NCBI RefSeq assembly: GCF_032191835.1
Contig: NC_083230.1
Span: 92,256,001-92,320,000 of the forward strand
Direction: 5' to 3'
Source of the DNA: Heteronotia binoei
Lineage: Eukaryota
DNA: 64,000 nucleotides
A program made the position numbers and the translations under genes. The notes below the pieces were generated by a model. It was given only the letters and a program-made list of their open reading frames with translations. It was not told the origin of the DNA and did not search any database. Every line of letters begins with the position of its first letter. The stretch's first letter is position 1. Below, piece after piece: positions 690 to 36,400 of the stretch.

Positions 690-3054
690 CTCAGAAGCAA
701 CCCTTTTAAGCAAAGAGGAAGGCAGCTGAAGCTGCAGCTGCCTTTTGTTCACCTGTTTCATGCTCACTAAAAAAGTTATGCTGTGCCTACTGGGAGCAGC
801 CGAGAACACCAGATTTCAGTGTCTGGAGGGGAATTTAGTATACCTGAACTGACTGCAAGTCATAATGACAGGACATCCCCAAAAAACCATATCTGTCAAT
901 TAGCAAAACTATTTAGCATTTGAAAACAAGCAAAATTCTCTCAACCACTGACCCAGCACATGGCTGCTCACTGTGGTCAGCATTCATGTGTTAAGGTTGT
1001 CTTTGTCTACAATCAATCACATGATAAGACAGCTGAATAAGACCTCTGCCAACAACTGTTAGTAGGAAGCTGAAGTGACGTGGTTGAGTTTCCCTTCCTA
1101 GGTTGATGGATGCTCTAGATTACCTGCAGATTACAATGTGGTTACCTGCAAACCTCTGTAAGCAACCCAAAATGTTTTAAAAACCATGCATAACTAACAT
1201 ATTTAGGTACGATAGTGTATTACATAATATATTATTCACTGTTAAAATATTCACCTTTACCAAAGCTGTTGGGTATAACTACCAATAGAAGATGGTTATA
1301 ACCAAACAGCATTAGCAAGGGCCATATACATGATCTGAAGGTATGAGATGCTGCAGCATTACTGAAGTTATGACCTGATCAGTTCCTTGAATACAGGGCG
1401 TTCAGCATAAAAGCTAGATAAGACATGTATGAAAAAGTGACATGCAATGTACAATTCTGCCACTGATCTTAACAATGAAAACATTTATGTTGCGTTAGGG
1501 AGCTCAGATGCTAGATTTCCATTATGTTAATGAAGTTTATAAGGCATCCATTAATCCTCGGCATTTTAAATAAGAGCTCTAGACAGATGGTTGAGCCAGC
1601 ACTCAGTGGGGAGATCAAGATCCTGCCCTGACACTTCCTGGACTTCTGTGACACCCATACACTGGATACTGTGTATGTATAACCCATGTATTACAGTGTT
1701 TGCATAGCTCATGTACTGATTGTTACTGCACTCTATAATCTATCATCTCCTCCTACAGAATGCTCATGGTGGTATATATGTTCTCCCAATCTCCATTTAT
1801 TCCCTCACAACAACCTAGGTTAGGCTGAGAGAAAGGGACTGGTCCAAAGTCACCAAAGTAATTACACAGTAGTGCATATTTAAAGTCAGCTCTCCCTGTT
1901 TCCCCAGTACCACACCATACTAGCATAGGTCTCTATGCAAATGTGACCTATAAAGCATGGTTTCAGAAGGGTAGCTGTGATGGTCTGCAGCAGAAGAACT
2001 AGATACAGTTCATTAGCACCTCAACTGTAGCTCATATTAATACACAGATGGGTACTAGAAGAGACAGTGTTGCAGACCCGCAGCCAGGATTACAAATTTG
2101 GTGGGGCCACAGGCAGGATTTTTGTTTAGGGTGGCCATGGGGCTGGACTCTCATTGTCAACTCTCAAAATATTCTGTTAATGCCCCTAAAAAAACCAAAT
2201 GTCACGTTATCCCTTCTATTATCACAAAATTATGCACAAGCTTTCATCTTTCCCTGCATTTTTTATCAGGCTGGATGGTAAGGGGGCGGGGGAAGAGAAA
2301 GAAAGGGGTTAAGGCCTCTTGAACAGAGCGGCGACAAGCAACAGGGGACTGGTTGGTGGGGCCATAAAGGGATTTGATTGGTGGGGCCTGCGTTGCCCAT
2401 AGCTACAGGCCTGCAGTGTTGGGTAGTCAAAAGGACATGGTAGAGAAGGTCAGTCCAAGTCCTGATCCTCAGTAGAACACTGCTGAAATCTATATATGAC
2501 TATGTTTGATGCTCTGTAAGTGTTTAATGGAGTACCAACAGCAATCAAAAGTACTTATCAAAGTTATTACCTACCATAAGAGACCCTTATTTCAGCTAAT
2601 AAACTGTAGCTTCTATAATATTTAATACTTAAGATGCTGGTTTTTTCTAGATATTGCATAGTATGGCAACTATGAACTCTTTTCTAACATCACCTTATAC
2701 ATTGTTTATTCAAGTACAAAACCAAAGCTCTGGAAATTACTAGATAGATTTACTTAAAAAAAAAAAAAGATTATTCAGGCCTTCCATCCAGTAACGATAA
2801 CGAAAGAAAATGAAATGTTTCCATCAAAAAACACAATACTAGAAGTTTTGAACTCTTCACCCAAATACAAAGAGTATAGCTGGGCTTTGAAAATCCCACA
2901 GCTAAGAACGTCAATCCGTAGGAGAGGTTTTCATAAGCCTAACACTACATTTCATAGAGATGGATACTGGCAGGATCTCTAGATACAGACACTAGAGTAA
3001 CAGTCTCCTACTAGGTGTACCTTTCTATAGGTGAGCTTTTAACAACAGACATAC

Positions 3055-16374
<13,320 letters not shown>

Positions 16375-16545
16375 CTTTCCCCCCCGCTACCACAATGCAC
16401 CGCGGCGGGAGGGAGCCCAGGCGGCCGCTGGAGCCAGCTTCGCCCGGGAAAGCGCCCCAGGATGGAAGCCGCCGCTGAGGGGCTTGAAAGATATATAATA
16501 AGCAATGAATAGTGCTGCCGCCGCCGCCTCGTTCGCAGTCTAGGA

Positions 16546-16813
16546 CAAGGGTGCCCAAACTGTGGCCCGGGAGCCACATATGGCTCTTTCAGACATATTG
16601 TGTGGCTCTCGAAGCCCTCACCAGCCACGTTGGCCGGCGGCTTGGAGAATGCATTTAAAGTTAAAGTTGCTTTCTTTCCACCTCTCTATCTCCCTCCTTC
16701 ATCTATTTCCTTCCTTCCTTCTCTCAAACATCTGACGTTCATGTCTTGTGGCTCTCAAATATCTGATATTTATTCTGTGTGGCTCTTACTTGAAGCAAGT
16801 TTGGCCACCCCTG
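16546..16813. mobile_element. hAT MITE in the HCFC2 proximal promoter
   Basis: TIRs caagggtgcccaaac / gtttggccacccctg; perfect 8-bp TSD gtctagga; a 5' piece of the same family occurs at ~63692. Confidence 0.9.
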
Positions 16814-18540
16814 GTCTAGGAGAACCTTGCAGATGTCACGAGCTCGCACCTTGCAGGGTTGTGTCGTCTTTAATTTTGTTCCCCCCTCACTGCTAGTCCC
16901 TTTGAGTCGAGTGCTTCTGAACCTGTGCAGTTTCCCAAGGGGGCCTTGGAATGCCCCAAAGGAGGGCAGGACCGGATCTACATGTTTCTTGAGGGGGGGG
17001 GGGGCAAAATTAAAAAAATTGCACCCCCTTATGGGCCATCCTATCTTATGCTCCCATAGAATGCAATGGGCTCCATACCCAATTTGGCGCCCCCCCCTGT
17101 TGGTGCCCACGGAAAGCACAGCACCTTTAAGGCCTTTAAATCTTAAAGGTACTACTTGACTCGTGCTTCATTCCTACACGATTTAGCATTGAGTTCTGTA
17201 AGGCTAGTATATATATAATGTGAAGAAGAACTTTCTTTGGGGGCTTCTGAATTCTAGTGTTATGGGAGGGGAGAACTGTTCACTCCCTTGCTTATCCCCC
17301 CCCCCCAAAGAAAGCCTGAACTCTGGCTTTTCCCCCTTGAAGAAGGTGCTCTAATCCCTTCATTATTTTGGTTGCCTTTTTCTTCCCCCTTTGGATGAAT
17401 ATCCTTTTTGAAAAGGAGTGACAGAAAGGCTGCTGGGAGGCATTTGGTTGCATCCAGATGCTCATGGGAACAGTTATTTACTGTCATTCCTTTAGCATAG
17501 AAGGTCATTGTAATGCTGTTGTTATGTTGTCGCTATTTTCATCAGCCACAACACTAAAATTTCATTCTCAGGCAGTCACTGCCAGTTCAAATTCTTTCTG
17601 TATATACCCATCCCAAAACTAGATTTCTTGAATCTGTGTGTCTTAATTTTGGACTTCTTTATATTTGCTGTTTAAAGAGATCCTCTTAAAGCTCTTCACA
17701 AACCATCCTGAATAATTTGGTGCTATCTGCCAACTGCAAGGAAAGGAGTCTTTAGAGTACCGAGTCTGGGATGGGGTGGATAACACTTCATTTTCTTATC
17801 CAGGTAGTGTTGGAGGAAAGCAAGGAGCTTCATAACCATGTTTTCTTTCTCTGTTCTTCCTTTGTCCCTGTTTCTGTTGCCCATCTGAGATACACACAGG
17901 CAAGGTAGGCCAGAAGCACAGTAGAAGTAATGCACAGCGCACCAGCAGAGTAGCCAACACAGACTCTGGAGCAGAGCTATTCCAAAGGTATATCTTCACT
18001 TCAGAATGGTGAGCATGAAATGCATGTTCATCAGGGTATTATTTGTTGCAGAATGTTTGCCTTGGCAACACCATGAATTTCTTCTGAGCATCCTGGCTGT
18101 CTCTTGTTTGTGATCTAGTGTAGTGTAGTTTACTTGGTTCTGTCAGTATGTGTGAAACATACCGCTGCTCATCTCAGTTAAATTTTGATTTGAGAGTTAA
18201 TCTGTTTGGAAGGGATAATTTCATCCTGTGTATGTGTTAGATAGTAATACAGGAAAATGCAAGAAGATTGAGATAGATGCACCAAGGCTGGCCCTTCCTC
18301 CACTTGATGTTACATCCCTGTTGAAAAAAGCTTAATGCAGGGATCCCCATGGGTGCCATGGCGCCTGTGGACACTTTTCCTGGTGCCTGACAAATGCTTT
18401 AGAAAGTGGGTAGGGTTAAGTGGAGCTTTTGCCCGGCAGGGCTTCTAATTGGGTGCACAGACTAAAAGGCATCCTGTTAACCAGAGCTTCTGCCTGAAAT
18501 GTTGAATTCTGCCTGAAAATGTTGAATAATTCTACTATTA

Positions 18541-18676
18541 CAGGGGTGGCCGGTAGCTCTCCAGATGTTTTTTGCCTACAACTCCCATCAGCCCGAGCCA
18601 TTGGCCATACTGGCTGGGGCTGATGGGAGTTGTAGGCAAAAAAAACCATCTAGAGAACTACTGTTGGCCACCCCTG
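18541..18676. mobile_element. 136-bp palindromic hAT MITE nested in an older hAT element (~18338-18822)
   Basis: CAGGGGTGGCC termini; perfect TSD tactatta; same family as 35270-35406. Confidence 0.9.
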
Positions 18677-19149
18677 TACTATTAGTATTATATATAACCT
18701 CATTCCCTAACATTTTGTGCTTGGCTCCATCTTCTGTCGCAGCCATTTTGTGATTGTGCCCACTCCTCCCTCCATGTAAAATTCCAAAGGTACCCACAGG
18801 CTGGAAAAGGTTGGGGACCACTTAATGTATCTAGTGTATTCATTGTTTCTTATGTACATTTATAAACATTTCTACTGTCGTTTGAGATATGTTTTCCAAA
18901 AGGGCATTTACATTTTTGTTAGTTTCCCAAACAAAGAATCCCTGGGGTTTTTATTTCATTAACAATAAGTAAATATCATGCAGTATTCATTGCCCTGTCC
19001 ATTGTTCATGTTTTAAAAATACTTGTAAACTGATAGGCCCTGCCATGTTCAAGGCAGCTAAAAACAAATATTTAAGCAAAACTGTAATCTGAGCTCAGAA
19101 CTGTTTTTGAGGTTTCTTCTGGAAGAGCTTTTTCCCCCCTCTGGAATTT

Positions 19150-19543
19150 TCTCTCGGATGAGGATCAGCTGGAGGGGGAGGAAAGTTAGCCAAATCTGGA
19201 GCTGTGTCGTTCAGCACATCTGGAAGCAGTTTTGTGTGGCTCTCTCACTCCACCAAGCAATGTCTGGATTCTGTGCAGCTCCATAGTAGCAGAAAGGAAG
19301 GAAAACCTACTCTAAGTAAACTGCAAGAGAATTTCAAAGACATTTCCCTATCAAAACATGTCTATAGGGACTACAGAGGACTTCCAAGTCTCTTCTGTGC
19401 AGGATTTCAACAGGGATCTCACAAGAGATCCAGTTTGGGCATGATTTTCTTTTTTGTCCTGGACCATCCAGCAACCAAGAGCAACTGCCTTCCAGTTATT
19501 GTTCTGGAGAAAGACATCTTGATTGCTGTACTGCATTTAACAG
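19150..19543 (+). other. GLT8D2: Probable GLT8D2 5'UTR exon 1 (start position approximate)
   Basis: Unique-looking sequence ending in a consensus donor CAG|GTAAGA at 19543/19544, upstream of the ATG exon. The TSS cannot be determined from sequence. Confidence 0.5.
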
Positions 19544-19616
19544 GTAAGACATTCTACAGGAACCCAGTCCGTTTCCTTTTTCACTCCTGTTGCTGCGCCC
19601 TTTCATTTTGTTATAG

Positions 19617-19640
19617 GACCCTTCACCGTGGCTGGATAGA
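19617..19640 (+). other. GLT8D2: Probable 24-nt GLT8D2 5'UTR micro-exon
   Basis: Long pyrimidine tract plus ttatag| acceptor (19615-19616) and a consensus |GTAAGT donor at 19641; a 73-nt intron separates it from the previous donor. Confidence 0.5.
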
Positions 19641-20081
19641 GTAAGTATTCAGTGACAAACTTCCAAGAGTTTTAGTAAATGCCTTTACAGAGTTATGAGC
19701 AGATACGATCTCATTTTTGAAAAATGAGACTCCAACCTTGATCTTACAGAATTTTCATGTATTGAACCAAAAACAAGACCTTTGTGCTGGTTTGGATTCT
19801 AGAGTTTATGATCTGGTGCAAATTACATGGGTGTGACTGTTATGAAGGAAAGCATATGGTACATTTTACATGGTAAATGTGAGACCAAGTGTGGTTTGGG
19901 GCCCTGGTGAATGGGGATAGAACGGTTTTATTTACTTGTAAAAAGATTGCTTTGAATTTCTGTGCTTTAAAATGGGAAGTACATATGGACCACGCTGGAA
20001 AAAGAGGCTTCTAAAATAGAGCCCTTTCAACAATGTAAAGATTCTTTGTGTGTGGAAAGTCTGAGAATAATATCCTTAAAG

Positions 20082-21091
20082 CAGGGGTGTCGAACTCATT
20101 TGTTATGAGGGCCAGATCTGACATAAATTAGATGTTGTTGGGCCAGGCCATGTGATGCCAAGTAGCAGAGATACAAACTTTATGCAGACAAACACAATTA
20201 AGGAGTTAAAAAAAACCACTCAAAATAAAACATGCTTAAAAGATTAGCACTCTTGCAATATTTTGTTTGTTTAACAGTCTCCGATAACTGACACCTCTTG
20301 CTCTGAATTGCATCAAAATCTGAAGACAATGTGCTGCAGCATTTTTTTTCTTTTTAAATTAAACTAGTAGTTTGTTAATAAACAGAATTCTGCATTCTAC
20401 ATTCAAATATAAAACAACCAAGCAACAATCTTATTACAGGTAATTGTCACTAACATAATATTTCATATAAAACAGTATAATATTTTAAAAAGTTCATGAC
20501 TGCAATTATGCTTTCAGCTTTATATTAGGTAAGATAGTAAATCAATATTTCTCAACTGACCCTGGGAAATATTGTGATACATTTGTGCAATAAGTAAATA
20601 AGTAAATATTTATTGGCTCCCAATAGTTACTTATCTTATTGAGCACAATATGCTTCCACTCAATTCATATTACTCTGATCTGATCTATTTTTAAATTATC
20701 TGAAAGTAGATTATAGTTGTGCTGTAGCAATCTTGAGTAGCTGCTCAGGTGTTGTTCAGGTGTATGTCTGTAAGTTGCAAACCTACTTTTCATTACTGAT
20801 ATTCATTACAGAAATCTCATGGTCAATGCTTTGAGCCTAAGATCCAGTAGAAAACATGAAATGGCTGGACAGTACAAGCTTTTGTGCTTCATGTGCTGGT
20901 CAGCCAATGGAGAAAATAGAGGCATTGCTCTGTAGCTCCTGTGCAATGGAGCAAGCTTGGCAAAGCAATCTGTGATGGAGAAGGAAGCAAGAGAAAGAGA
21001 AGGAAGCAAATGGCAGTGAGTTGCTCGCAGGTCTGATGGGAGCCCTCTGGGGGCCTGATCTGGCCCTGGGGCCACATGTTTGACACCCCTG
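20082..21091. mobile_element. hAT non-autonomous element (same family as 7557 and 58042, opposite orientation)
   Basis: TIRs caggggtgtcgaac / gtttgacacccctg; TSD ccttaaag/ctttaaat. Confidence 0.85.
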
Positions 21092-21319
21092 CTTTAAATG
21101 ATACTTTTCCAGACTGATTCAGTAAATTATGCTACAATCCTGTGGACACTTACCTGGAAGTAAGTCCCATTGAATGGTAGGACTACTACTGTGGTTTACT
21201 GGTTAATATCCCAGCTAGGAGCTGTGAGAAGTTTGCTAGGTGACCTTGGACCAGTTACAATCTCTCAGCCTAACCAGAGGGTTGTTGTAAAGACAAGGAG
21301 GGGAAGAGAAAGATGTAAG

Positions 21320-21562
21320 TAGGATTGCCAGGTCATCCCAGCTAGCAGGGGATAGGTGGAGTGGTGTTGTAAAATCCAGGTTGGGAAACTCCTAGATATT
21401 TGGGGATGGAGCCTGGAGAGGACAAGGACCTCAGTGTAGTACAGTGACAAAGAATCCACCCTCCAAAACATCCATCTTCTCCAGGGAAACTGATCCTTGT
21501 AGACTGAAGATGAACTGTAATTCCGGGGGATCCCAAGGGCTCATCTGGAGCTGGCATCCCTA
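21320..21562. mobile_element. hAT MITE with TAGG(G/A)TTGCCAG termini
   Basis: TIR pair plus perfect 8-bp TSD gatgtaag; an older relative lies at 36570-36744. Confidence 0.8.
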
Positions 21563-22157
21563 GATGTAAGTCACTTGAAGTCCCCATTGGGGAGAGAGGC
21601 AATATATAAATGAAATAAGTAAATAAATAAATCATGAGTAAACATACATAGGATCACACCATATATGTATTAATGGGGCCATTGCAATACTGATGAATCT
21701 ATTTGTTAAGAACAGAGGAGCAACTGTGGTGGATCAGACCACTTAGTCCTGCACCCTGTTTCACACAGTAGCCAACCAGTTAGTTAGTTTATTTGATTTA
21801 TATCTTGCCCTCCACACTGAAGCAGGCTCAGGACGGCTCACAAACACAACAGAATAATAATAAAAACAGTTAAATTAAACATTAAAATAAACAATTTAAA
21901 ACAGTTTAAACAACCAGATGCCCCAAGCAGAACTATGGCAGCAACACAAAGGCCAAAACCTTTCACTGTTGTTTCCATTCAGCACTAGTATGCAGTGAGT
22001 TACTAATAGAACCTCCACATTACTGTGTGGAGGCTCATGGCTAGTAACTATTAACGTATCTGTGACTTTTTTCTGACTGCCTTCTAATGCCAACTATATG
22101 CAACATATATGAGATGAGAAACCACTAGAACAGGTTCCCTTTTTTAAATATTTAGGT

Positions 22158-22500
22158 GTGCTGTTCCATCAGTCAGCCTCTTGGACCTCTCATACTGACT
22201 ATGCTAGGCGTAATCTCAAAAAAGCTGCTGTGGGGCAATTGCGATTTTATAGGAGAAGAGGTGGATGCTTGATACGTCCAGCTGTAGAAATCTACAAAAT
22301 GCAGTTATTACCCCAGCTTCTGTATGGAGCACCAGTATGGGCTTCTGGAAATCTTCATACTTTAGAAATTTCCCAAAATAAATTTACACACAGGCTTCTT
22401 GCTGTCCCACCTTCAACACCTTCTGTAATGACTAGAATAGAATTATCTTTATCTCAGATAACAACCTTAGTTCATAAAATATTTAACATCTCACTATCTT
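22158..22500 (+). mobile_element. Non-LTR retrotransposon RT C-terminal fragment (RTEX-like; clade tentative)
   Basis: IYKMQLLPQLLYGAPVW...LEISQNKFTHRLLAVPPSTP...RIEL motif pattern. Confidence 0.6.
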
Positions 22501-22555
22501 CTATGTGAATAAATTAAAAATATGATTGTAAAACTTTTCAATTCAGAATAACAAA

Positions 22556-22720
22556 CTCTTGTGAGATCCCAGTTGAAATCCTGCAGAGAAGAGACTTGGA
22601 AGTCCTCTGTAGTCCCTATAGACATGCTTTGATAGGGAAATGTCTTTTGAAATTCTCTTGCAGCTTACTTAGAGTAGGTTTTCCTTTCTTTCTGCTACTA
22701 TGGAGCTGCACAGAATCCAG
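22556..22720 (-). repeat. Inverted copy (~95% identical) of 19264-19427
   Basis: The reverse complement aligns end to end (165 vs 164 nt) with about 6 differences. Confidence 0.95.
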
Positions 22721-22789
22721 TGGTTAATCTAACTCAGAAGGCCTGGATGGGCAGCAGTACTCTTTTCTGCTTTAGGAGGAGAATATTCA

Positions 22790-23001
22790 TATGAACATAT
22801 GAAGCTGCCTTATACTGAATCAGACCCTTGGTCCATGAAAGTCAGTATTGTCTTCTCAGACTGGCAGCGGCTCTCCAGGGTCTCAAGCTGAGGTTTTCCA
22901 CACCTATTTGCCTGGACCCTTTTTTGGAGATGCCAGGGATTGAACCCGGGACCTTCTGCTTCCCAAGCAGATGCTCTACCACTGAGCCACCATCCCTCCC
23001 C
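22790..23001 (-). mobile_element. tRNA-derived SINE with a CR1-like 3' tail
   Basis: Head gtggctcagtggtagagcatctgcttgggaagcagaaggtcccgggttcaatccctggc (A and B boxes); tail ...aaggcagcttcatatgttcat; second copy at 37019-37221. Confidence 0.8.
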
Positions 23002-23084
23002 TGCAGTCTGGGAATGGCAGCTGAATAAGCCCTCTCATAGATCTCTGCCCACCTAACTTCAGCTAAGGCGGCTTCTCCTCCTCC

Positions 23085-23810
23085 TCATTATTATTGAATT
23101 GCCTCATCCCAGCCAATGTCGGGCTCTAGGCAATGTACAACAAGAAATACACATAAAACCAATAAAACCAGTTAATTAAAAAGAGTTGCAACCCAGTGGA
23201 CATTCTTTATAATGTGCTATAGTTCTGCTTTCTAGGCATTGGGAGCAGAGGGGGCTGCCAGCCTGGCAATCATCACTGTCCTCAAGCAGAAGCCTGGTGG
23301 AACACCTCTGCTTTACAGGCCCTGTGGAATTGTAAAAGATCCCGGAGGACCCTGGTGTCTTCCAGCAGAGAGTTCCACTAGGTCAGGGCCAGGTCTGAGA
23401 AAGTCCTGGCCCTCGTTGAGGACAGCTGGACCTCTTTAGGGCTGGCGATCACCAGTAGGTTTCAACTAGTGTAGCATAGTGCTCTTTCAGGGACATAGTA
23501 CTCTTCCAGGGAGGAGGCGGTCCCGTAGATACATCAGTCCCAGACTGCTCAAGGCCTTAAAGGTCATAACCAAAACCTTGAATCTAACTCAGTACTCAAC
23601 CAGAAGCCAGCATAGGTAGCTGCTGCAGCACAGGTAGAAAGTGTGCTGTCCATGATGTTCCTGTCAGGAGAGAGCACCATGCATGGATTTGACCGCTCAG
23701 GCAGGTTGATACGGATTGAAGTGGCCTCTGTGGCAGATGGGGGATAACCTTGGCTGTGCATAACTGTCAAGGGGAAGTAGGTCTGGTGGTGCTCAAAACT
23801 CCAGAGCAAG
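23085..23810 (-). mobile_element. Degraded L2 3' fragment
   Basis: Similar to the L2 C-terminal and 3'UTR sequence of the young copies (ttatgacctttaaggcc..., tggaactctct...). Confidence 0.6.
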
Positions 23811-24398
23811 TTGTATCTGGGTGTACATATATTGTTCCTGGCTCACTCAAATGAGATTAAAATAAGAACTTCTGATATAGCTCAAGTCAAGATTGAATTG
23901 AATCTGTTTCAGGTTACAAGTACATCAAGACAAAGCACTGTCACATTTCACCATCCTGATCAATAGCTATTGGTGGACCTATCCTGCATGATTTTGTTTA
24001 ATCTCTTTTTAAAGTCATCTAAGATAGTAGGTATCACTACTATATTTAATGACAGTACCACATATTCCCCCTCTTTCTTATGCCTCATGAAGGTAGATCA
24101 CTTTGGACGCTGAGAGCTGTAGCACTGTGAGGAGGAACAGGAGCAAGTGTTACATTAGAATACTTAAAAAATTTCCCTGAGGATGCTTACTGTTGGAAAT
24201 GCATTATACATTTCTAATCTCTATTAGATAGATTGGGGATGTTTCCCCTCCAAGTAAAAAGCAACATCTGATGTCAACATCTAGGTCTCTGAAACACTAA
24301 GTCCAGATAAGGTATGCCTACTTTTGATCATGTTTTAACTTTCCTCTCCCTGTCTTTCATTCTTTCAGTAACAGGTTGCAGCCCTCCAAAAGGGACAC

Positions 24399-24417
24399 AT
24401 GGCTTTACTCCGAAAAA
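24399..24417 (+). CDS. GLT8D2: GLT8D2 coding exon 1 (19 nt of CDS)
   Basis: ATG GCT TTA CTC CGA AAA A|gtaaga = MALLRK. Confidence 0.9.
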
Positions 24418-27400
24418 GTAAGAAATCTTCAAGGCTAAAATGCTAATTTAAATAATTAGTTTCTCTGTTTGCAAGTGATACCCACAGAAGGGAACAGGCA
24501 GGTAAGGCTGTGGAGTACCCGCAGTCCCAGCCATAGATGAGTTTTAGATTTTGACAAGACAGGCCACCATAGGAAATAACTCAAAAACAGAATAACTGGT
24601 AACCATTGCTCCAGCATTGATTTGAAGCCTACTCAGGGCCCCACCTCCTTGGAGATCAGCCCTCAGTTAAAGGGACAACACTGTTTCTGAGATGCATTCT
24701 CTAGTAATGTTGTTCTGTGTCCTGTTTAAAATTATAGTCCTTTATCAAAGGAAATCTGTGTGTGTGGTTGGCTCTGTGGCTACACCCCCGAATGACCCAA
24801 GTCAAGAGTGTTTCATCTTCTCAAGGGCCTTGGTGTCTTTGGATTCTTCTGATACAGAAATGCCTCTCTGCTTCCTTGACCATGACACTGGTTAACCATT
24901 TTTTCTGTATGAACAAGGGCGTGGTATTGTATTCTGTCACCATATTGTATGCAGTGGGGTAGATTCTGTCTAGGACTAGAGGAGCAGCATGACCAGAAGT
25001 GAGCATTGCCTTTCTGCTCCTGTGGAGTAGCTGCCTTCTAAAGTGCTTTGGGCTCTACAAGGGAGGAAGGTGGCTAGCAAATTTATAATATAGTGGATTT
25101 GATGCATTGAAGAGGTGGAGTAGTAATGAACATCAGCTCTTTATTAGATACAGCATTAGGTGGGCTACACTTCAAGACTGAGGAACTGGGCCAATGGGGC
25201 CAACTGTATACAACTCAGGGTTCCCGCGCCAGCATGTTATTGGGTCATTCAAACCAGCAGGGGGCTTGTGATTGGTGCAGGGCAGCAGGGATTTGGATCC
25301 TGCTGCCCATTGTTCCCAAGTCCCCAAGCTCCGTTCTTCTGGCTCCAATGAGCCAGGCAGGAACACCATATATAGTCTTCACTTTGGTCAGCATATACAA
25401 CAAAATTATTTAAAAGAACAAATAAAGGGTTGGTGGACCATCAGAAAGGTGTGTGAGTCTGCATTGGGAGGAGGAAAATCCCAGGTGTTTTTTTTTCTGC
25501 AGGCAAGATGTGTCTTCAGCTAGCTGAATCCTTAATTAGGATCTACCTCAATGCTAATTATTAACAGGCTGTCCTTTCTCTTTCAGTTAATCAGATTCTA
25601 CTGTTCCTACTTGTTTTTACCATCTGTGTCATTCTTTATAACAAAGTTCACAAGATGCCATCTACCTTGCTAAAGAATGAACCAGGTACATGCCTATTGT
25701 TAGAATCTGTTTTTACTTTGACATTACCAAGATTGACCATTCCCATTCATAATACAAGATAAATTGGAATGTAGAGTCCAGAGCAAGCTGGCTTGCTTGG
25801 TTTCTCTAGCTTCTGCCCAATGCTGTTGGCTGCATACCCTTCTCTGCTACTAGCCAGCCAACAGTATGCCTGTTCTAGCTGCCCTATTCCCTCATGACAG
25901 CTACAGTGCCTCTGCATGCAAACAAGCACATGAGCGTGGGCCCAGTTCCGTAAGGAAATATGGCAGCCAAAACCAACATGGCAGCAGCCAGTAGGTATAT
26001 GGAAAGAAAGCTCATATTGAAATAAATGCTGTTAGTCTTTAAAGTGCCTTTGGGCTTTTTGTTTTGTGTTGACCAAGCAACAGACCTAGATGGTAGACTA
26101 GGAGAGAAGCCTGACATTAATTCGCAATGCCATTGACTTTCACCAAGACTTTCCTCCCAGCCTCTTTTACAGACTTCTGTAAAGGGCCCTTCTAGTGTAG
26201 AACTACAGCATTGTGTGTAGCAAAATAAAACAGCAGTCCAGGAGTGCTTAGAGATAAACAACATTTATTCCAGCATAAGTTTTCTTGAGTCAGAGCTCAT
26301 TTCACCAGACAGATAAACTGTACATCCATCTGACAGATGAAGGCTACAAACAATAGAAACAGTAGAGTGTGGGAGGACCGTTCCTTAACTGTTGATATAT
26401 CAGCCAAGTAGGATTAACATAAAGTCAGATCTAGAAAAGTGCAAAATTGAAACATGAAAAGCAGATCCAATTAGAAAATTGTATCATCTATATATCTAAT
26501 AGTGACATGTGACTCCATCTGCAGATATCTAAACCTGCACATCTGGGCCACGCTGACACTAAACAGATTTTCCTACAAGCTTGGGGGAGCTCCTGAGTTT
26601 GCAGAAAAACCTGAATTCTGAAAAAAATACACTGGAGATTTAAACAAACCTCCCCAATAGACTATTTCTGCCCGCGCACTGAAATACTCTTATTTTGTTT
26701 CTGCAGTGGTAAGCATTAAGAGCCACACTGGGATGCTTCTCAGGCCCTGGCCATGTCATCATAGGATGCCAGGAATCACTCCAGGCCTGGGCACAGCAGC
26801 AACAGATGCTGGGAGCTGCTGCAGATTCAGAGAGGCTCCCAGATGCTGCTGTTTCTTGGCTGAGCTCAGTGGTGGGTGGTGGGGTCTGGAGCCAGGCCAA
26901 ACCCAGCAATGGAGAGGGGGAGATGGAATCCTCCCACACATACACACAGTTGTATGTTTTAATAATGAAGTCAGTCAAATCTTTTTTTAAATTTTTTTAA
27001 AATATTTTAATTAAAAGTAAGTCAGTCAGATCTGAGGATACTTAGATCCAGCGACTGGAGCACTGAATGGACAAGACAGATATTTCTATCAGCCTGAATA
27101 CTGCCCCAGATAATTTGGCCAAGGGCTTAGAGGTTGCAGTTGGTTGGTTGGTTGAAGCAAAGCCAGCTGAAATTAAATCCACAGAAGATGGAGGTCCTGT
27201 GACTGAGCTGAGGAGATCCCAGGCTGAGATGCCAATTTCCAGCTCTTGATGGTGTGTCATTAACTTCAAGGCCACTTGTGAAGAGCTTGGGTGTGCTTCT
27301 AGATGCCTCCCTTTCCTTGGAGGCTCATAGAATCATAGAGTTGGAAGGGACTCAGATCACAAATGTTGCCAGACTGGCATTATTCCATCTATACAAGATA

Positions 27401-30400
27401 AGGCAACTGGTTCCCTTCCTGTCTCACCCAGACTTAGCCATAGTGATCCATGCAATGGTCATCTCCAGGATAGACTACTGTAACTCACTCTGTGCAAGGC
27501 TACCTTTGAGACTGATCCAGAAACTCCCAGCTGGTCCAGAATGCCGTGGTGCATGTTCTTCAAGGTACACTATTGAGAGCCCACATACAACCAGTGCTCC
27601 ACCAGCTGCACTGGCTCCAAGTTGAATACTGGATCAGGTTCAAGTCTTGGTTCTAACCTTCAGAGCTCTACATGGTCTGGGACCATCTCTACTAGAACAC
27701 TGCTTTATGGACAATAACCTCCTGGCGGTCCCAATTTTTTCCACCTAGATCACTTCTGTTGGGGAGTTAATTCCTCTGATGTTTTCTAACTTACTGATTC
27801 CATGCCCTCTTTGATGTACAACGCAACCAACCCAACCCTTTCTCTCGTGCTGTTTATAGTATATAGTATATAGTGACTGACATTGCAATGGAAGCAGTGC
27901 CATGGTCAGATCACTTTGCCCTTAAGGCTCGTATGGGGGTGTCACCCAAAACCTGTTTAGGCGGAGAGCGTATTTTTGCTCACCCGCGGAGCCTGATGGA
28001 CCCGGAACGGTTCCTAACGGCCCTTCGGGACACCTGGCCCGCTGGCGACTCCCTGGATGATCTGGTAGAGTCCTGGAATGATGGGCTCTCCAGGGCCATC
28101 GAGGAGGTCGCACCCAAGCGCCCTCTGCGTCCCTGCTCGAAGCCGTCGCCCTGGTTCAACCAGGAGCTGCGGCAACAAAAGCGGGGACTCAGACGACTGG
28201 AGAGGCAATGGCGGCGTACTCGAGACGAAGTGACCCGAACATCTTATAGAGAGAGTTTGAAGGCCTATGAGATGGCAATCAAAGCTGCAAAGAAAGTGTT
28301 CTTTGCGGCTAAGATTGCGTCCGCAACTTCGCGCCCGGCACAATTGTTCGACATAATTAGAGGACTTACAACGCTGCCGCAAGGCAGACTAAATTCTACT
28401 GAATTGGAAATAGGCTGTGAGGCTTTTGCGAAATTTTTTGTGGATAAAATCGCGTCACTCCGTCCCGACCCCCCTGCCAATTTTGAGACAGTTAGCGAAA
28501 TCGAGGCCCCGAGTCTGTCTTCGGACTATATGCTGGACGGCTTTAGCCCCCTCAGCCTGGAGGAAGTTGACAGGATTCTCTTATCTGCTCGCCCAACTAC
28601 TTGTAAACTGGACCCATGCCCTTCCTGGCTTATTAAATCTTGCCAGGGTGACCTTAGATATCCTATACGGGATATCATAAATAGACCCCTGATGGAAGGG
28701 CATTTTCCAACGCCGCTCAAAGAGGCCGTGGTCCGCCCCCTCTTAAAGAAACCATCTTTAGATCCGGCCCAATTGGCACACTATCGGCCGGTCTCAAATT
28801 TGCCTTTTCTGGGCAAACTTATTGAGAGGGCAGTGGCGATGCAGCTACAGACCTTCCTGGAGGATGCTTCCATCCTTGACCCATTTCAGTCCGGCTTTCG
28901 CCCGGGACATGGGACGGAGACGGTGCTGGTCGCCCTAGTGGATGACCTTCAACGGCATCTGGATCGGGGCGGCTCGGCGGTGCTGATGTTGTTAGACCTG
29001 TCGGCTGCGTTCGACACGGTCGATCATCGGCTACTGAAGGGTCGTTTCGCTGACGCGGGGATTCAGGGGTTGGCCTTACAGTGGCTTTCCTCTTTCCTTG
29101 ACGGTCGGGGACAAAGGGTCGCAGTTGGGGGGGAGCTGTCCCGGAGGTGCACACTTGATTGTGGTGTACCACAAGGGGCGGTTCTCTCCCCGATGTTATT
29201 TAACATCTACATGCGGCCTCTTGCCCAGATTGCCCAAAGGTACGGGCTAGGGTGTCATCAGTATGCTGATGACACCCAGCTCTATCTACTGATGGACGGC
29301 CAGCCGACCTACGCCCCGGAAAATCTAGATCGGGCATTGCATGCCGTGGCTGAGTGGCTCAGACTGAGCGGGCTGAAGCTTAACCCTGCGAAGACAGAGG
29401 TCCTTTGCTTGGGTCGCCACGGCCCGGGAGGGGGAATCCCCCTACCAGCCTTTGACGGTGCGCCGCTGATAGCGGCGGACAAGGTCAGGAGCTTGGGGGT
29501 GTTATTGGAGCCATCCTTAAAGATGGAGGCTCAGATAGCAGCCGCTGCCAAGTCCGCGTTTTTTCACCTTAGGCAGGCAAGGCAGTTGGCCCCCTTCCTG
29601 GAGCGCAACGGCCTAGCAACAGTGATCCATGCTACGGTCACCTCGAGGTTGGACTACTGTAATGCCCTCTACATGGGGCTGCCCCTGTCCCGAACTCGGA
29701 AATTGCAGCTGGTGCAGAATGCCGCGGCCCGGCTGTTATTGGGCCTCCCAAAGTGGGAGCACATTCAGCCGGGTCTTCGGACTCTGCACTGGCTTCCAGT
29801 GATATACCGAGTCCGGTACAAGGTGCTGGTTATCACCTTTATTTTATTATTTTTTTTAAAAAGAAATTTTTCGTTTATTTGACATGAAAAAGTAAAAATA
29901 AACATCACAAAAAAAACCAAGTAAACAAAGCAAACAAATCAAACACAAAAATTGCAAAATACAACAACACAGAAAATACATTAAACAGAAAACCCCATAC
30001 ACCCAAGGAGTGGAAGGGATCAGGTGAATTACAATTACTCCACATCGAAACCTTTACTTTTAACCCAACTGTACATAGGGCCCCATTCCTCCTGACACTT
30101 TTCTACATTACCATCTTTCAATCTCGTGGACAATAAATCTGATTCGGCAGCATCCAGCAGTTTGGTAACAAATTCCTCTCTATTAGGTACTTTTTCAGAT
30201 TTCCAATGTTTTGCATATAATACTCTAGCTACTGTAACTATATACAACAATAATTTCAGTTTTATTTTAGGAATGTTTTGTCGGCATATATTAAGTAGAT
30301 ATGGTTCAGGTGTGTGGTTGATGTTAATTTTCAGAATCTTTTGGGACCACGTATTGACTTGTGCCCAAAACTTTTTAGCGTGATCACACTGCCACCAGAT

Positions 30401-33400
30401 ATGAATAAGGGATCCCTTTGTTTCTCGGCACTTCTAGCATTTGTTCGAGTATTTGGGGTAAATTCTAGCCAATCTGTCTGGAGTGAGGTACCATCTGTAC
30501 ACCATTTTATAAAGATTCTCTTTAAGTTCTGCAGGTTTTATTAGTTTTAAATTCTGTTTCCATAATTTTTCCCATTCGATCAAATCAATGTTAAATCCGA
30601 AATCTTTTAACCAACGAATCCAACATTCTTTAACTGTCTCTCCTTGCATCTTTAATTGAAGTAGCCAATCATAGGCCTTAGAGATAATTTTCTGTTTGGT
30701 TGAAAGTAGCAAATCTAAGTCGTTGGGTTTATTCAGAAATCCCTTTTCCTTGTCCTTTTGAAATCTAGATTTTAGTTGGCATTGTACCCACCAGTCTAAT
30801 TTGGTGAGTTCTTCCTCAATCAAGGCATTATTGTCATCCAATAAAGTTCCGTAGTTATGCTGGTCTTTCCAGGCATACAAATTAGGGTGCGTCAGCTTCT
30901 ATTGGGGATAGCCACATTGGGGTATTATGGTAATGAACCTTGATTTCTTGCCAAATTCTAAAAAGAGATCTTCTTATTTCATGTCTTAAAAATAAACTTG
31001 AGTTAGTAGGGTTGCGGTACCACATGTAGTTGTGCCAGCCTTCCCCCAGACCCGCACCTTCCAACACTAGGAGTCTTTTATTTTCCAGGGAGCACCAGTC
31101 TCTCAGCCAAGCTATACAGCAAGCTTTGTAGTATAGACTCCATTCTGGGAGGGCAAGCCCCCCTCTTAATTTACTATCATACAACACCTTGGATTTTATT
31201 CTAGGTTTCTTGCCCTGCCAGATGAAGATCTTGACCATTTCATTAAGCTGTTGAAAGAATAATTTGGGAAGAATAATTGGAATCGTTTGAAAGAGAAATA
31301 AAATTATTGGAAGAACATTCATTTTAATTGTGGCAATTCTACCTAAAAGTGAGATTTGGAGGCCTTCCCATCTGGTTAGATCGTTTCGAATTTCCTTAAG
31401 TATTTTATCATAATTATCTCTGTACAAAGTTTTTAAGTCATTTGTCAAATAAATACCTAAATATTTCAATTTCTTTTCCTGCATAAAACCCGAGAGAGTT
31501 TCTAGTTGTTCAATCTGAGATTTATTCATATTCTTCGTTAAGATCTTAATTTTGGATACGTTCAATTTAAATCCTGAAATTTCACCATATTCTTTTAATC
31601 TTTGTTTCAAGAAGGTTATGGACGAAATCGGTTGTTCCAGGATAAATATTAAATCATCCGCGAAGGCTAATGTTTTAAATTCTTCGTTCTTCATTCTAAC
31701 TCCTTGAATTTTGGAGTCGTCTCTAATCTTTTGGATCAGAGGTTCTAGTGTTAGAATAAAAAGTAAAGGTGACAGGGGACAACCCTGTCTAGTACCTTGT
31801 TCTATATTAATAGGTTTAGTCATAGTTCCATTGAAGTTGATTCTTGCAGTTTGATTCGAATAAATTGCTGCTACCAAATTACGAAAATTGTCCCCACATC
31901 CAACAGCCGCAAGTGTCTTGCAAATCATATTCCAGTTAACCTTATCGAATGCTTTCTCTGCATCAACCATGATTCCCGCAAACTGTTTGTCAGGGTGTTC
32001 CTTGTAATATTCAATGATATTCAACAATAATCTCACATTCTGACTCATAAGACGTCCCGGAACAAAACCTGTTTGATCCCCGTGGATTATGCTGGAAATT
32101 ACCTTCTTGAGCCTATTCGCAAGAATTGTGGCAAAAATCTTGTAATCACTATTTAAGAGTGAGATAGGTCTATAATTTGGCTTAAAAATAATATTGGCAA
32201 ATATTTACGCTCCCAACGAAAACCAGGAGAGTTTTTACAAAGCATTACATCTCAAACTTAGAGAATTTGACTCCGAAAATTGTTGTATAATTGGAGATTT
32301 CAATGCAATATTTGATGCCAAAATGGACAAAAAATTTGAAGACCCCCCAAAAAGAAAAACGCGAAATCTATTACCCAAGTCTTTCTTGAAAATAGCTGAA
32401 GAACTAAATTTAGTGGATGTCTGGAGAACTAAGAACCCCCTTACTAAGGACTATACATATTATTCACATGTCCATAAATCCTGGTCTAGAATAGATATGT
32501 CTTGGGCATCCTTGAATTTGACATTATCTATAAATCAAACGGACATTTTACCTCAGACATACGCAGACCATAGCCCAATCCAATTGGTCTTGCAGGGAAA
32601 ATCAAGAAACCCCCGCTGGTCTCTTAATTTACAAATTTTAAAAGAGAGCAAATTTTTGGAAATGGCCAGGAAAGAAGTTAAAGAGTTCTTTTCTAACAAC
32701 CGGGAGGAAGACACCAAGATGCCTATTATATGGGACGCTTTTAAGGCCTTTTTCAGAGGAATAGCGATTAGATATTCCGCACAGAGGAAGAGAGAACAAA
32801 TGAAGTCATATAACGAATTGGTATCCAAACTGAAGATCTGGGAAAATCAGCAAAAGACCAAAAATTCAAAAGAGACGAAGGCCAAGATTATATCCACCCA
32901 ACATCAAATTAATCTTCTTTTGACAGAGGAGATTGAGCGGAAACTGAAGTGGGCAAAACAAAATTATTTCGAGAATGCAAATAAAGTGAGTAGATGGCTG
33001 GCTTATAAATTAAAGAAGGAAAAGCAGAAAAGGATCATTAAATCCTTGAAGAATAAAGAAAACGAAGAGGTTTTTCAGAGTTCCCAAATGAGTGATATTA
33101 TCCACAATTTTTACCAAAATCTTTATAAGATATAAGTCAAAAACAAGAGGACTATATAACAAATGTTAACCTGAACAAGATTACACATGAACAACAACAA
33201 GGGTTGGACAACCCTATTACAATTCATGAAATAGTAGAGGCGACCAAAAGTCAAAAACGAAACAAGACCCCAGGACCTGACGGTCTACCAATTGAATTTT
33301 TTAGAACATTCGAAGATATTTTACTGCTACCATTTAAAAAGGTGATTGAGAACATACAAACTACGGGGGAGCCCCCAGACTCTTGGAAAGAAGCTTTAAT

Positions 33401-36400
33401 TACCCTAATCCATAAAGAAGGAACTGATTCTTCGGAGATCAAAAATTATAGACCTATGGTTATCACCTTTAAAGCCCTATATGGCTTGGGACCTGTCTAC
33501 CTGAAGGACCGTCTCTCCCCGCATGTTCCCCAGAGAGTACTGAGGTCGGGATCACAAAACTTCCTTACTGTCCCTGGGCCGAAAGAAGCCCGCTTGAAAG
33601 CCACAAGAGAAAGGGCCTTCTCTGTTATGGCCCCTACATGGTGGAATCAGCTACCGGAAGAGGTGAGGGCCCTGCGGGACCTTGTTCAGTTCCGCAGGGC
33701 CTGTAAAACAACCCTCTTCCGGTTAGCCTACACCTAGCTTGAGAATTTTAATGCAACCTGCCAGATCTCTGTATATATTGGAATATTTATTAATTTTTAT
33801 GGTTTTATCTGTTTTATCTGTTTTAAAGTTATTCCCTTACATGTTTAAATATTGTTTAATTTATGTTGGATCTAATGCTGGAAGCCGCCCTGAGCCACTT
33901 GTGGGAAGGGCGGGATATAAATTCTAAATAAAAAAATAAAAATAAAAATAGAGCTTATATCCAGGAATGACTATATCCCAGAAATTTTCCACATTCCACT
34001 ATGTTTCTGAGATGCTTACTATATCCAAATTGTCACTGAACATCAAATAGTCCAGCTCCCCCATCTTGGCTCAGAGACTTCTAGCACTGGTATATAGATG
34101 TCTATAATGTGTTTCCCTCTCTAGTAACCTTGCCTCTTTCATCCCCTTGGCTGTCAGTCACCATCCTACCCTCACTCCCAAGTTCTATTACACTCCTGTG
34201 AATATTATCCTGAGTGTTTATGCAACAGCCAGTTTGGTGTAGTGGTTAAGTGCACAGACTCTTATCTGGGAGAATTGTGTTTGATTCCCCACTCCTCCAC
34301 TTGCAGCTGCTGGAATGGACTTGGGTCAGCCATAGCTCTCATAGAAGTTGTCCTTGAAAGGGCAGCTGCTGTAATAGCTCTCTTAGTCCCATCTACCTCA
34401 CAGGATGTCTGTTGTGGGGGGAGGAAGGTAAAGGAGATTGCGACCACTCTGAGATTTGCTAGCAGCCTGGTTCCTTTTTGGTTCAAGTGAAAACCCTCTC
34501 TTTTGTACACGTTTGGCTTGTCCCAGAAGGTTCCCCAGGGCCTAATAAATCTAAACCATCCAAGCACCACTTTCTCATCCATGAACTGACATCCCTGCTC
34601 TGTACCTGCCTAGCTGGCCCTGTGTATGGAATTGGCAGCACTTCTGAGAATGATATCTTTGAGGTTCTGTTCTTTAACTTTCTGCCTAGTAACCTATGCT
34701 TTTGCTCCAGAACCACACAACTACATTTCCTAATGGCATTGGTGCCAACAAGACTACTGGCTGCTCCCCAGTGCTATCTGTTATGCTATCTAGACAGTGC
34801 ATGATGTACACAGCCTTTGCACCAGGCAGGCAAGTAACCATGTGGTCAAAATGCCTGTCACAGACCCCCCTCTCTCTATTCCTAATAACTGAATCACCCA
34901 CTACCAGAAGCCTTTCACCCAGCCCTCCATGGATATCCTTAGTATGAGAGGATATCAGTCCATTGCTCAAGCAAGGGGTCCCTTCTAAGGGATCACATCC
35001 CTCCTCCTCAGACTGATGCCTTCCACTCAAGACTCTCGCTCTTCACTACAGCAGAAGAGCTGTCAGCACAGGTGTAGGACTGTTCTGTTAAGTCTCTGAG
35101 GGTCTCTTCCCCAAACTTCTGTCTATGCCTTGGTTTCTTCAGGTTGGCAACCATAGGCTCAAGGCAATGAGCTCATTGCAGCAGGCACACACCTATGATT
35201 ACCAAATCATTGGATAACTCCTCTGCTGGCTTTCTTCATAACTGGTTAGTGGTTTAAAAGTATCTAGAGCAGGGGTGGCCAACGGTAGCGCTCCAGATGT
35301 TTTTTGCCTACAACTCCCATCAGCCCCAGCCATTGGCCATGCTAGCTGGGGCTGATGGGAGTTGTAGGCAAAAAAATATCTGGAGAGCTACCGTTGGCCA
35401 CCCTTGATCTAGAGTAATGCAGGGTCCCCAGGCGTGATCTCCAGGCTAACAGCCGTAGACCAAGAGCCCTTTGACTCTCGCCCTTTGGCTTATGCCTCTC
35501 CTTAGGAGAAGCTTTAGTACAGAGGCCCACAGCCTCTGCCTCCCAACAGCAACATCAGAGGATGGGACCTGCAAAGAGGCAAACAGATCTTGTTCAATGA
35601 GTAGTAGACCAGACAAAAGACCCAAACAGGCCCGGACAAAAACACCGGTCTCCAGCAGGGTATAAGTACCCACTCACCTCAAATTCTGTTCTCTCACAAA
35701 ACAACCTCAGTTAATGTTCCCCAGTAGTTTAGCAGTTTAGAAAAGGCAACCAATAAAAGGTATCGTCCATTACATCTGTTAATTAGTTATCTATATCTGT
35801 ATAAAATTCTGATTTGTCCTGCTTGTCCTATTGCACTCTGTGCTTTCACAGATCAGACTTTATGTTAGTTCTACTTTGCCAAGCTGTCAACTGTTGGGGC
35901 TGAACAAAGCAGGAGTCAAGTTGCACCTTTAAAACCAACCAAGTTTTATTCAGAACGTAAGCTTTCGTGTGCTCTTAAGCACACTTCATCAGACGAGCAG
36001 AGCCATACATAGCTGGTAGGCAGTGGCCCAGAATGCAAAATGGTACAGATTTAAGAACCAATGACAGTGAAGTAAAATTATCTGGTAGGCAGTCGTCACG
36101 CACTTTCTAACATCTCCCTCCCACACTGCCTTACCATTGTTTGCAACTTTTAATGTAAATTCATAGGACTTATAGATCTGATGCCTCTGATCAAGTGAGT
36201 ACTGACTCAGGGAAGCTTATCCTCTGAAGTGCCACTGGATTCCTCCTGTGTTATTTTGCTGCTACTGATATGGCTGCCCATCTAGAATTGTAGTAACATG
36301 TGACCCCATTTTTTTTTTTTTTAAATAGTTGACTTGGAGAGCCCGGAAGAAATGGAAGAAGACATTCCTGTGGTGATATGTGCTGCAGCAGGAAGAATGG

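What the first reader, a model, noticed from the sequence alone, without database searches (positions are those of the whole stretch)
19264..22720. Gene-specific inverted duplication: a piece of the putative GLT8D2 5'UTR exon copied antisense into its own intron
Seen: 22556-22720 is the reverse complement of 19264-19427 (~95% identity, 165 bp). It does not resemble any TE I recognise. It lies between an RTEX-like LINE fragment and a SINE, 3.1 kb downstream. Inference: in GLT8D2 pre-mRNA the intronic copy could pair with exon 1, looping out the exon-1 donor and the 24-nt micro-exon. That would be a built-in cis-antisense element able to affect splicing, editing or nuclear retention. The origin is probably a local templated insertion during break repair.
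Basis: partly seen in the sequence, partly recalled or inferred. Interest (0 to 1): 0.7.

Follow-up and report, generated by a model that had tools for sequence, protein, structure and literature searches.

The report
Exon piece copied backwards into intron
A 164-base piece of the first, non-coding exon of the lizard gene GLT8D2 was copied backwards into the gene's own first intron 3.1 kb away, most likely as a DNA-repair patch; the gene's RNA could then fold into a long double strand, but nothing shows that this does anything.

Summary
Window 19264-19427 and the reverse complement of 22556-22720 align over 165 columns at 96.4% identity (5 substitutions, 1 indel; E 3e-74), and the window has no third copy.

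The gene is GLT8D2, on the + strand. Arm A lies inside exon 1 (5'UTR, donor at 19545). Arm B lies in intron 1 (19545-24368).

In two related species' DNA, arm A sits in place at single-copy depth. Nothing was laid on arm B in any of four relatives' runs. So arm A is the source, arm B is a younger lineage-specific copy, and the segment is not a multicopy repeat in those relatives.

Arm B has no target-site duplication, no poly(A) and no microhomology. That fits a break-repair "patch" (class-2 templated insertion). Earlier notes of this scan describe similar local inverted insertions elsewhere in this genome.

In silico the arms form a duplex of -297 kcal/mol that closes a 3.1-kb loop holding the exon-1 donor.

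Editing, splicing effects and retention are untested, because no reads of this species were available. Verdict: a real but ordinary kind of mutation in a neat position.

The parts
19158..19544 (+). GLT8D2 exon 1 (5'UTR). The 5' end is approximate (at or upstream of 19240, perhaps 19158 or earlier). It ends at the donor ACAG|GTAAGA, with GT at 19545-19546.
   Evidence: donor sequence; in probable RNA run X8 a 1746-nt contig ends at 19240, depth is confined to 19179-19572, and both neighbouring bins are zero. Lerista edwardsae model P0257 residues 1-113 are homologous to 19158-19490, followed by exon 2 and exon 3.
19264..19427 (+). Arm A: the source segment, internal to exon 1.
   Evidence: a single 1843-nt contig of relative X1 spans 18851-19553 and 19657-20081 at single-copy depth (8), so the segment is ancestral and in place.
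19545..24368 (+). Intron 1 (4.8 kb), rich in repeats that are high-copy in relatives (19967-20360, 20755-21936, 22725-23700).
   Evidence: splice sites; depth profile.
22556..22720 (-). Arm B: inverted copy of arm A. It reads as exon-1 sense on the - strand, so it is antisense within the GLT8D2 pre-mRNA.
   Evidence: depth 0 in the bin 22528-22724 in all four relatives' runs.
22721..22783 (.). 63-nt spacer of unknown origin between arm B and the SINE. It may or may not belong to the same insertion.
   Evidence: no match elsewhere in the window, and it lies outside the SINE-SINE alignment.
22784..22997 (-). Old tRNA-derived SINE (tRNA-Pro-like head at 22925-22997). It is context, not part of the event.
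   Evidence: tRNA, 55 bits; 78% identity to the copy at 37011-37212; depth 8,000-20,000 in relatives.
24369..24417 (+). Exon 2 (36-49 nt, depending on which of three tandem AG acceptors at 24368, 24374 or 24381 is used). It holds the start codon at 24399 (MALLRK). It lies downstream of arm B, outside the loop.
25586..25690 (+). Exon 3 (membrane-anchor part); bounds are approximate. Further coding exons lie near 36343-36519, 37459-37581, 38124-38222, 42895-43017, 43810-43977 and 45005-45118, and the last runs from about 46951 to the stop at 47133.
   Evidence: Pfam GT8 on four exons; tblastn of named GLT8D2 proteins.

Best explanation
A young, lineage-specific templated insertion. An internal 164-nt piece of GLT8D2 exon 1 (5'UTR) was copied in reverse orientation into intron 1, 3.1 kb downstream. 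The most likely route is a patch that filled a double-strand break during end-joining repair. The template was either the nearby DNA or a cDNA of the gene's own transcript.

Shown: the two copies, which one is the source, their exon and intron positions, single-copy status in relatives, and the lack of retrotransposition hallmarks.

Inferred: the repair mechanism. Also inferred: in the pre-mRNA the arms can pair into a 165-bp near-perfect duplex that closes a 3.1-kb loop holding the exon-1 donor. The expected consequence is some promiscuous A-to-I editing of the 5'UTR piece and of the intronic copy before intron 1 is removed, with little or no effect on splicing. The element is most likely a neutral by-product, not a selected regulator.
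For: - The pair is real and only two copies exist in the window.
- Relatives' DNA covers arm A with its flanks on one contig at single-copy depth. Arm B's bin has depth 0 in four runs, while 22134-22527 is covered at single-copy depth.
- At 19356 the relatives and arm B share G while arm A has A. So arm B keeps an ancestral state, which is what an aged true copy should show.
- Arm divergence is 3.0% against about 11-12% (X1) and about 6.5% (X8) between species, so the copy is younger than those splits.
- No direct repeat of 8 or more exact bases, and no 12-mer with up to 2 mismatches, flanks arm B. There is no poly(A) at either end and 0 bp of microhomology between donor flanks and target flanks. 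These are the features that PMC5110952 gives for class-2 templated sequence insertions.
- The neighbouring SINE is much older (78% between copies), so it is not part of the event.
- Duplex energy is -297 kcal/mol against -55 for shuffles. The minimum-energy fold of 19158-22800 pairs 160 of 164 arm A bases with arm B, a gain of 234 kcal/mol.
- Other notes of this scan report local inverted insertions elsewhere in this genome. These are leads only.
Against: - No reads of this species were available, so copy number in its own genome, assembly correctness and expression are unchecked.
- No contig across an empty site was seen in relatives. Depth 0 could partly be a hole.
- The insertion's true limits are unknown: whether 22528-22555 and the 63-nt spacer belong to it.
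- The 3.1-kb spacing is longer than that of most edited inverted repeats. In human, 78% of edited Alus have their partner within 1 kb (PMC4053975), so pairing in vivo may be inefficient.
- Similar events noted elsewhere in this genome carried target-site duplications. This one does not.
Confidence: 0.6

Rival explanations
1. One reading: a built-in, functional cis-antisense element. Pairing of the intronic copy with exon 1 regulates GLT8D2 by changing exon-1 splicing, causing editing of the 5'UTR or retaining the RNA in the nucleus, and it is kept by selection.
For: The duplex is strongly favoured thermodynamically and dominates the predicted fold of the 3.6-kb stretch. Both arms lie in the same primary transcript, and arm B is transcribed before the exon-2 acceptor. 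Exon-intron duplexes are the classical ADAR substrates and are linked to splicing (PMC1920255, PMC3479170). One upstream ATG (19358) lies inside arm A.
Against: Arm B was not found in four relatives, so there is no conservation. Arm B has taken most of the substitutions (at least 2, probably 4 of 5) and shows no compensatory pattern. No exon lies inside the loop. No RNA data of this species exist here.
Confidence: 0.1
2. Replicative template switch (fork stalling and template switching, or microhomology-mediated break-induced replication), not end-joining patch repair. A stalled or broken fork copied 164 nt from the opposite strand 3 kb away and then returned.
For: The donor is local (3.1 kb), the orientation is inverted and the donor is retained. 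Other local inverted copies were noted in this genome.
Against: No microhomology is visible at either junction when donor flanks and target flanks are compared. The mechanism cannot be told from patch repair without the empty site.
Confidence: 0.2
3. Reverse-transcriptase-mediated event tied to the neighbouring mobile elements. Examples are a LINE enzyme that switched template to GLT8D2 RNA, a chimeric SINE-plus-mRNA retrocopy, or a 3' transduction.
For: The copied piece lies wholly inside a transcribed exon. The gene's introns hold LINE copies with long open frames carrying reverse-transcriptase and endonuclease domains, so the enzyme was available. Arm B lies 63 nt from a SINE.
Against: No target-site duplication and no poly(A) or LINE tail. 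The SINE is far older than the arm pair. No LINE protein domain was found next to arm B. Nothing next to arm A resembles the sequence left of arm B, so 3' transduction does not fit.
Confidence: 0.1
4. The segment is a multicopy interspersed repeat of this genome, and two copies happen to lie in opposite orientation.
For: Intron 1 is full of repeats, and arm B sits between two of them.
Against: Depth over arm A in two relatives' DNA runs is 5-9, the same as unique flanks, against 1,000-20,000 over true repeats in the same stretch. There are only two copies in 64 kb. There are no terminal repeats, no target-site duplication, no Rfam family and no unusual fold. The skink exon 1 is homologous in place.
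Confidence: 0.06
5. Assembly artefact: arm B is a misplaced or chimeric piece.
For: No reads of this species could be laid (one search found only relatives).
Against: The arms differ at 6 positions, and arm B carries the ancestral base at 19356. The arm has sharp unique junctions on both sides. An artefact would be expected to be identical to its source or to be a foldback next to it.
Confidence: 0.04

Closest known systems
Class-2 templated sequence insertions (TSI/TSIP; Onozawa and Aplan, PMC5110952)
   Same: A short stretch copied from a unique donor that stays in place. No target-site duplication, no poly(A), and joints like end joining. Donors are often transcribed sequence, which suggests a cDNA patch.
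   Different: The described human cases are templated from distant regions. Here the donor is 3.1 kb away in the same gene and inverted. The empty site was not seen, so the end-joining signatures (microdeletion, non-templated bases) could not be scored.
Editing-site complementary sequences of ADAR substrates (GluR-B Q/R and R/G sites, PMC1920255; Gabra-3 intronic duplex, PMC3479170)
   Same: Exon sequence pairs with a complementary stretch in the downstream intron of the same pre-mRNA, so pairing must occur before splicing.
   Different: Those are short, imperfect, conserved duplexes in coding exons with site-selective editing, usually within hundreds of nucleotides. This is a 165-bp near-perfect, young, unconserved duplex in a 5'UTR with 3.1 kb between the arms. 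It would be expected to be edited promiscuously if at all. No editing has been shown.
Inverted Alu pairs in primate pre-mRNAs (hyper-editing, PMC4053975; loop-out exon skipping, PMC13019027)
   Same: Two inverted copies a few kb apart in one transcript can form a long duplex that recruits ADAR or loops out what lies between.
   Different: Alu pairs are copies of a multicopy element, and for exon skipping both lie in introns around an exon. Here the arms are a unique gene segment and its copy, one arm is exonic, and no whole exon lies between them.
Local inverted templated insertions noted elsewhere in this genome by this scan (s1-328448, s1-333642, s1-340694)
   Same: Unique segments re-inserted inverted, 1.6-33 kb away, in the same genome.
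   Different: Those notes report target-site duplications of 11-27 bp. None is present here. I did not re-examine those loci.

Membership tests
Class-2 templated sequence insertion (break-repair patch) | The insert is a copy of a unique donor that is retained elsewhere. | tested here: met
   (two copies, 96.4%). (donor in place and single-copy in relatives).
Class-2 templated sequence insertion (break-repair patch) | No target-site duplication. | tested here: met
   no exact direct repeat of 8 or more bases, and no 12-mer with up to 2 mismatches, between 22470-22575 and 22700-23060.
Class-2 templated sequence insertion (break-repair patch) | No poly(A) tract or polyadenylation signal at the insert's end. 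| tested here: met
   the flanks read TTTGTTATTC (after the sense end, on the - strand) and GTGGTTAATC.
Class-2 templated sequence insertion (break-repair patch) | End-joining marks at the joints (microdeletion, microhomology, non-templated bases) relative to an empty site. | tested here: inconclusive
   One search shows 0 bp shared between donor and target flanks.
LINE-mediated insertion (class-1 TSI, retrocopy, 3' transduction) | Target-site duplication plus a poly(A) or LINE 3' tail. | tested here: not met
   No LINE domain next to arm B. No similarity between the arm A flank and the sequence left of arm B.
ADAR exon-intron duplex (editing-site complementary sequence) | An exon stretch is complementary to a downstream intron stretch of the same pre-mRNA. 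| tested here: met
   (positions). (predicted pairing).
ADAR exon-intron duplex (editing-site complementary sequence) | A-to-I editing observed in the duplex. | not testable with these tools
   One search found no run of this species.
ADAR exon-intron duplex (editing-site complementary sequence) | The pairing is conserved across species. | tested here: not met
   nothing was laid on 22528-22724 in four relatives. This is weak evidence, since a hole proves little.
Interspersed repeat (SINE, MITE, LINE fragment) | Many copies in the genome. | tested here: not met
   single-copy depth in two relatives' DNA; two copies in the window. This species' own genome was not testable.
Small-RNA gene or its retrocopy | Match to a known RNA family, or an unusually stable fold. 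| tested here: not met
   Rfam finds only the SINE's tRNA head; fold z-score 0.05.
Loop-out exon skipping or circRNA-promoting inverted repeats | Both arms are intronic and flank one or more whole exons. | tested here: not met
   Arm A is exonic. No exon could be placed between the arms. Exon 2 lies at 24369-24417, beyond arm B.
GLT8D2 (host gene identity) | Glycosyltransferase family 8 domain with the DxD motif, and best matches named GLT8D2. | tested here: met
   Pfam PF01501 on four exons. DDDV motif; exons are 82-94% identical to proteins that NCBI/UniRef name GLT8D2.

The most novel reading that the evidence does not exclude
The patch was made from the gene's own nascent RNA. A break in intron 1 of the transcribed GLT8D2 gene was repaired with a reverse-transcribed piece of the 5'UTR still tethered at the locus. 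That would create, in a single step, an exon-complementary intronic element, which would be the birth of an ADAR substrate of the exon-intron type caught early. It would tie RNA-templated repair in cis to the origin of editing-site complementary sequences.
Probability: 0.12. Interest if true: 0.55.

Novelty: new member of a known kind. Interest (0 to 1): 0.3.

Why it matters
If the arms pair in vivo, this is a dated natural case of a gene acquiring a long complementary partner for its own 5'UTR in one mutational step. It could show how exon-intron duplexes, the substrates of A-to-I editing, first arise and what a 165-bp duplex across an exon-1 donor does to splicing. With a handful of similar events noted elsewhere in this genome, it also adds to a picture of frequent local inverted templated insertions in this lizard lineage. 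As it stands it is a tidy example of a known mutation type with no shown function.

Tried and rejected
1. Multicopy repeat: rejected for relatives by depth. Not testable in this species.
2. Small-RNA gene or snoRNA-like retrocopy (165 nt, ACA near the end, an H-box-like AGAGAA): rejected. No Rfam hit and fold z-score 0.05.
3. 3' transduction from a LINE ending at 22555: rejected. No similarity between the arm A flank and 22500-22555. The open frame 22158-22508, which looked to me like a LINE ORF2 tail, gave no Pfam hit, no significant match to the window's LINE frames and only sub-threshold atlas hits.
4. Composite SINE-plus-arm retrocopy: rejected, because the SINE is much older and no shared target-site duplication exists.
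5. Fetching orthologous GLT8D2 loci to see the empty site.
6. Neighbour gene in the GC-rich stretch 14000-18000: ten open frames gave no Pfam hit.
7. The spliced GLT8D2 model was never joined. Exons were searched one by one by reference, and the joined step was left out.
Full report
**Observation.** The inverted pair is real. The repeat finder reports 19336-19427/22556-22647 (92 nt, 97%) and 19264-19338/22646-22720 (75 nt, 97%), which are two halves of one repeat split by a 1-nt indel. blastn joins them into 165 columns at 96.4% identity, E 3e-74. At word size 7 it finds nothing else in the 64-kb window longer than chance 20-mers. A global alignment gives 5 substitutions (19297 G/A, 19320 A/G, 19356 A/G, 19397 G/C, 19412 A/T, arm A/arm B) and one 1-nt indel. 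Similarity ends abruptly at both ends.

**Host gene.** Stop-free blocks on the + strand carry glycosyltransferase-8 motifs. Four of them hit Pfam PF01501.
- One exon, searched alone against the representative library, led to full-length proteins. The word search and cluster look-up show that NCBI and UniRef name these GLT8D2.
- tblastn of those proteins places the exons near 25586-25690, 36343-36519, 37459-37581, 38124-38222, 42895-43017, 43810-43977, 45005-45118 and 46951-47133 (stop).
- The start codon (MALLRK) is at 24399 in a short exon, 24369-24417, that is preceded by three tandem AGs and followed by GTAAGA.
- I searched the spliced model exon by exon, by reference. The joined protein was never built, so that step is left out.
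- The closest named proteins are squamate (a gecko, a skink, lacertids). Earlier notes of this scan call the genome a gecko.

**Is arm A exonic?** Arm A is followed 117 nt later by a consensus donor, ACAG|GTAAGA, at 19545. Two independent lines support an exon.
- In run X8, a small contig set guessed to be RNA from a relative, a 1746-nt contig ends at 19240 and lies on 19240-19392. Depth is confined to the two bins 19179-19572, and the bins on either side are zero. Run X9 shows roughly ten times more depth in 19376-19572 than in the intron behind it.
- The Lerista edwardsae GLT8D2 model P0257 (KAJ6658877.1) has an N-terminal extension whose residues 1-113 are homologous to window 19158-19490. 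It then continues into the homologues of exon 2 and exon 3 with nothing in between. In the window that frame has stops, so here it is 5'UTR.

Arm A therefore lies inside exon 1, and arm B lies in intron 1 (19545-24368), 3.0 kb after the donor and 1.65 kb before exon 2.

**Copy number and direction of copying.** No run of this species was found. The best holders had 4-11% of the sampled words. Laying four of them at 80% likeness was still informative.
- In the two DNA runs X1 and X2 (unique depth about 5-10), arm A and its flanks (18982-19966) have depth 4-10. True repeats in the same stretch reach 1,000-20,000.
- One 1843-nt X1 contig spans 18851-19553 and 19657-20081.
- The bin 22528-22724 (arm B) has depth 0 in all four runs, although 22134-22527 is covered at unique depth.
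- So the segment is not a multicopy repeat in relatives, arm A is ancestral and in place, and arm B was not detected. This last point is weak, because a hole proves little and no contig across an empty site was listed.
- At 19356 the relatives read G, as arm B does, so arm A changed after the copy was made. At 19297 and 19320 X8 agrees with arm A, so arm B changed there.
- The arms differ by 3.0%. The window differs from X1 by about 11-12% and from X8 by about 6.5%. The copy is therefore younger than both splits, which fits its absence there.

**Junctions and origin.**
- No direct repeat flanks arm B: none of 8 or more exact bases, and no 12-mer with up to 2 mismatches.
- There is no A-rich tail at either end.
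- Donor flanks and target flanks share no bases at the joints.
- The SINE 63 nt to the right (22784-22997, tRNA-Pro-like head) is only 78% identical to the other copy in the window. It shows no target-site duplication shared with the arm, so it is older and separate.
- The frame 22158-22508 to the left looked LINE-like to my eye.
- These features match what PMC5110952 calls class-2 templated sequence insertions: no target-site duplication, no poly(A), break repair with a DNA or cDNA patch.
- A replicative template switch cannot be excluded without the empty site.
- The copied piece lies entirely within a transcribed exon, and LINE copies with long reverse-transcriptase and endonuclease frames sit in the same gene. 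A cDNA patch is therefore possible.

**What it could do.**
- The two arms as RNA form a duplex of -297 kcal/mol, against -55 +/- 6 for shuffles.
- The minimum-energy fold of 19158-22800 pairs 160 of 164 arm A bases with arm B. Forbidding this pairing costs 234 kcal/mol.
- Neither arm alone has an unusual fold, and Rfam finds nothing in them.
- The loop would hold the last 117 nt of exon 1, its donor and 3.0 kb of intron, and no exon.
- By analogy with exon-intron ADAR substrates (PMC1920255, PMC3479170) and inverted Alu pairs (PMC4053975, PMC13019027), the expected outcome is some promiscuous A-to-I editing before intron 1 is removed. Bringing the donor closer to the acceptor might also modestly affect splicing.
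- Against a strong effect: the 3.1-kb spacing exceeds that of most edited repeat pairs (78% within 1 kb in human). The copy is not conserved, and its substitutions show no compensatory pattern. All of this is inference.

**Verdict.** This is a new member of a known kind of mutation. The scan has noted similar local inverted insertions elsewhere in this genome (s1-328448, s1-333642, s1-340694). Interest is modest.

Noticed in passing
window 19158-19448: Exon 1 carries several upstream ATGs: 19158 (in frame with 19260, stop at about 19284), 19358 (inside arm A, about 29 codons, stop near 19446) and 19441. The Lerista model P0257 translates the homologous stretch as a 140-residue N-terminal extension. 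This looks like a mis-annotated 5'UTR, since the window's frame has stops.
   Followed up: partly
window 24360-24382: Three tandem AG acceptors (24368, 24374, 24381) precede the ATG exon. The exon could therefore be 49, 43 or 36 nt long. The skink model fits the shortest best.
   Followed up: partly
window 22640-22663: On the gene's sense strand arm B supplies a pyrimidine-rich tract ending in AG (tcttttgaaattctcttgcag), a possible cryptic acceptor created by the insertion. No RNA data were available to test it.
   Followed up: no
window 18330-18830: A palindromic element with nested inverted repeats (18568-18600/18611-18643 at 97%, and 18526-18551/18666-18691). It is high-copy in relatives (depth about 1,500) and looks like a MITE. 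It lies just upstream of exon 1.
   Followed up: no
window 12001-14000: A low-GC (0.31), strongly purine-skewed stretch (GC skew 0.35, AT skew 0.20) with long spurious open frames, probably a simple or low-complexity repeat.
   Followed up: no
window 27873-29879, 30885-33132, 38773-41481: LINE copies in GLT8D2 introns with long open frames carrying reverse-transcriptase (RVT_1, E 1e-36 to 1e-22) and endonuclease domains, so they are fairly young.
   Followed up: partly
window 14000-18000: A GC-rich stretch (0.49-0.52) upstream of GLT8D2 with many open frames on both strands. None hit Pfam. It may be a CpG island of a neighbouring gene.
   Followed up: partly
window 19264-22720: Two 165-bp inverted copies could mediate inversion of the 3.1 kb between them, which would cut exon 1 from its donor. 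This is worth a look in population data.
   Followed up: no
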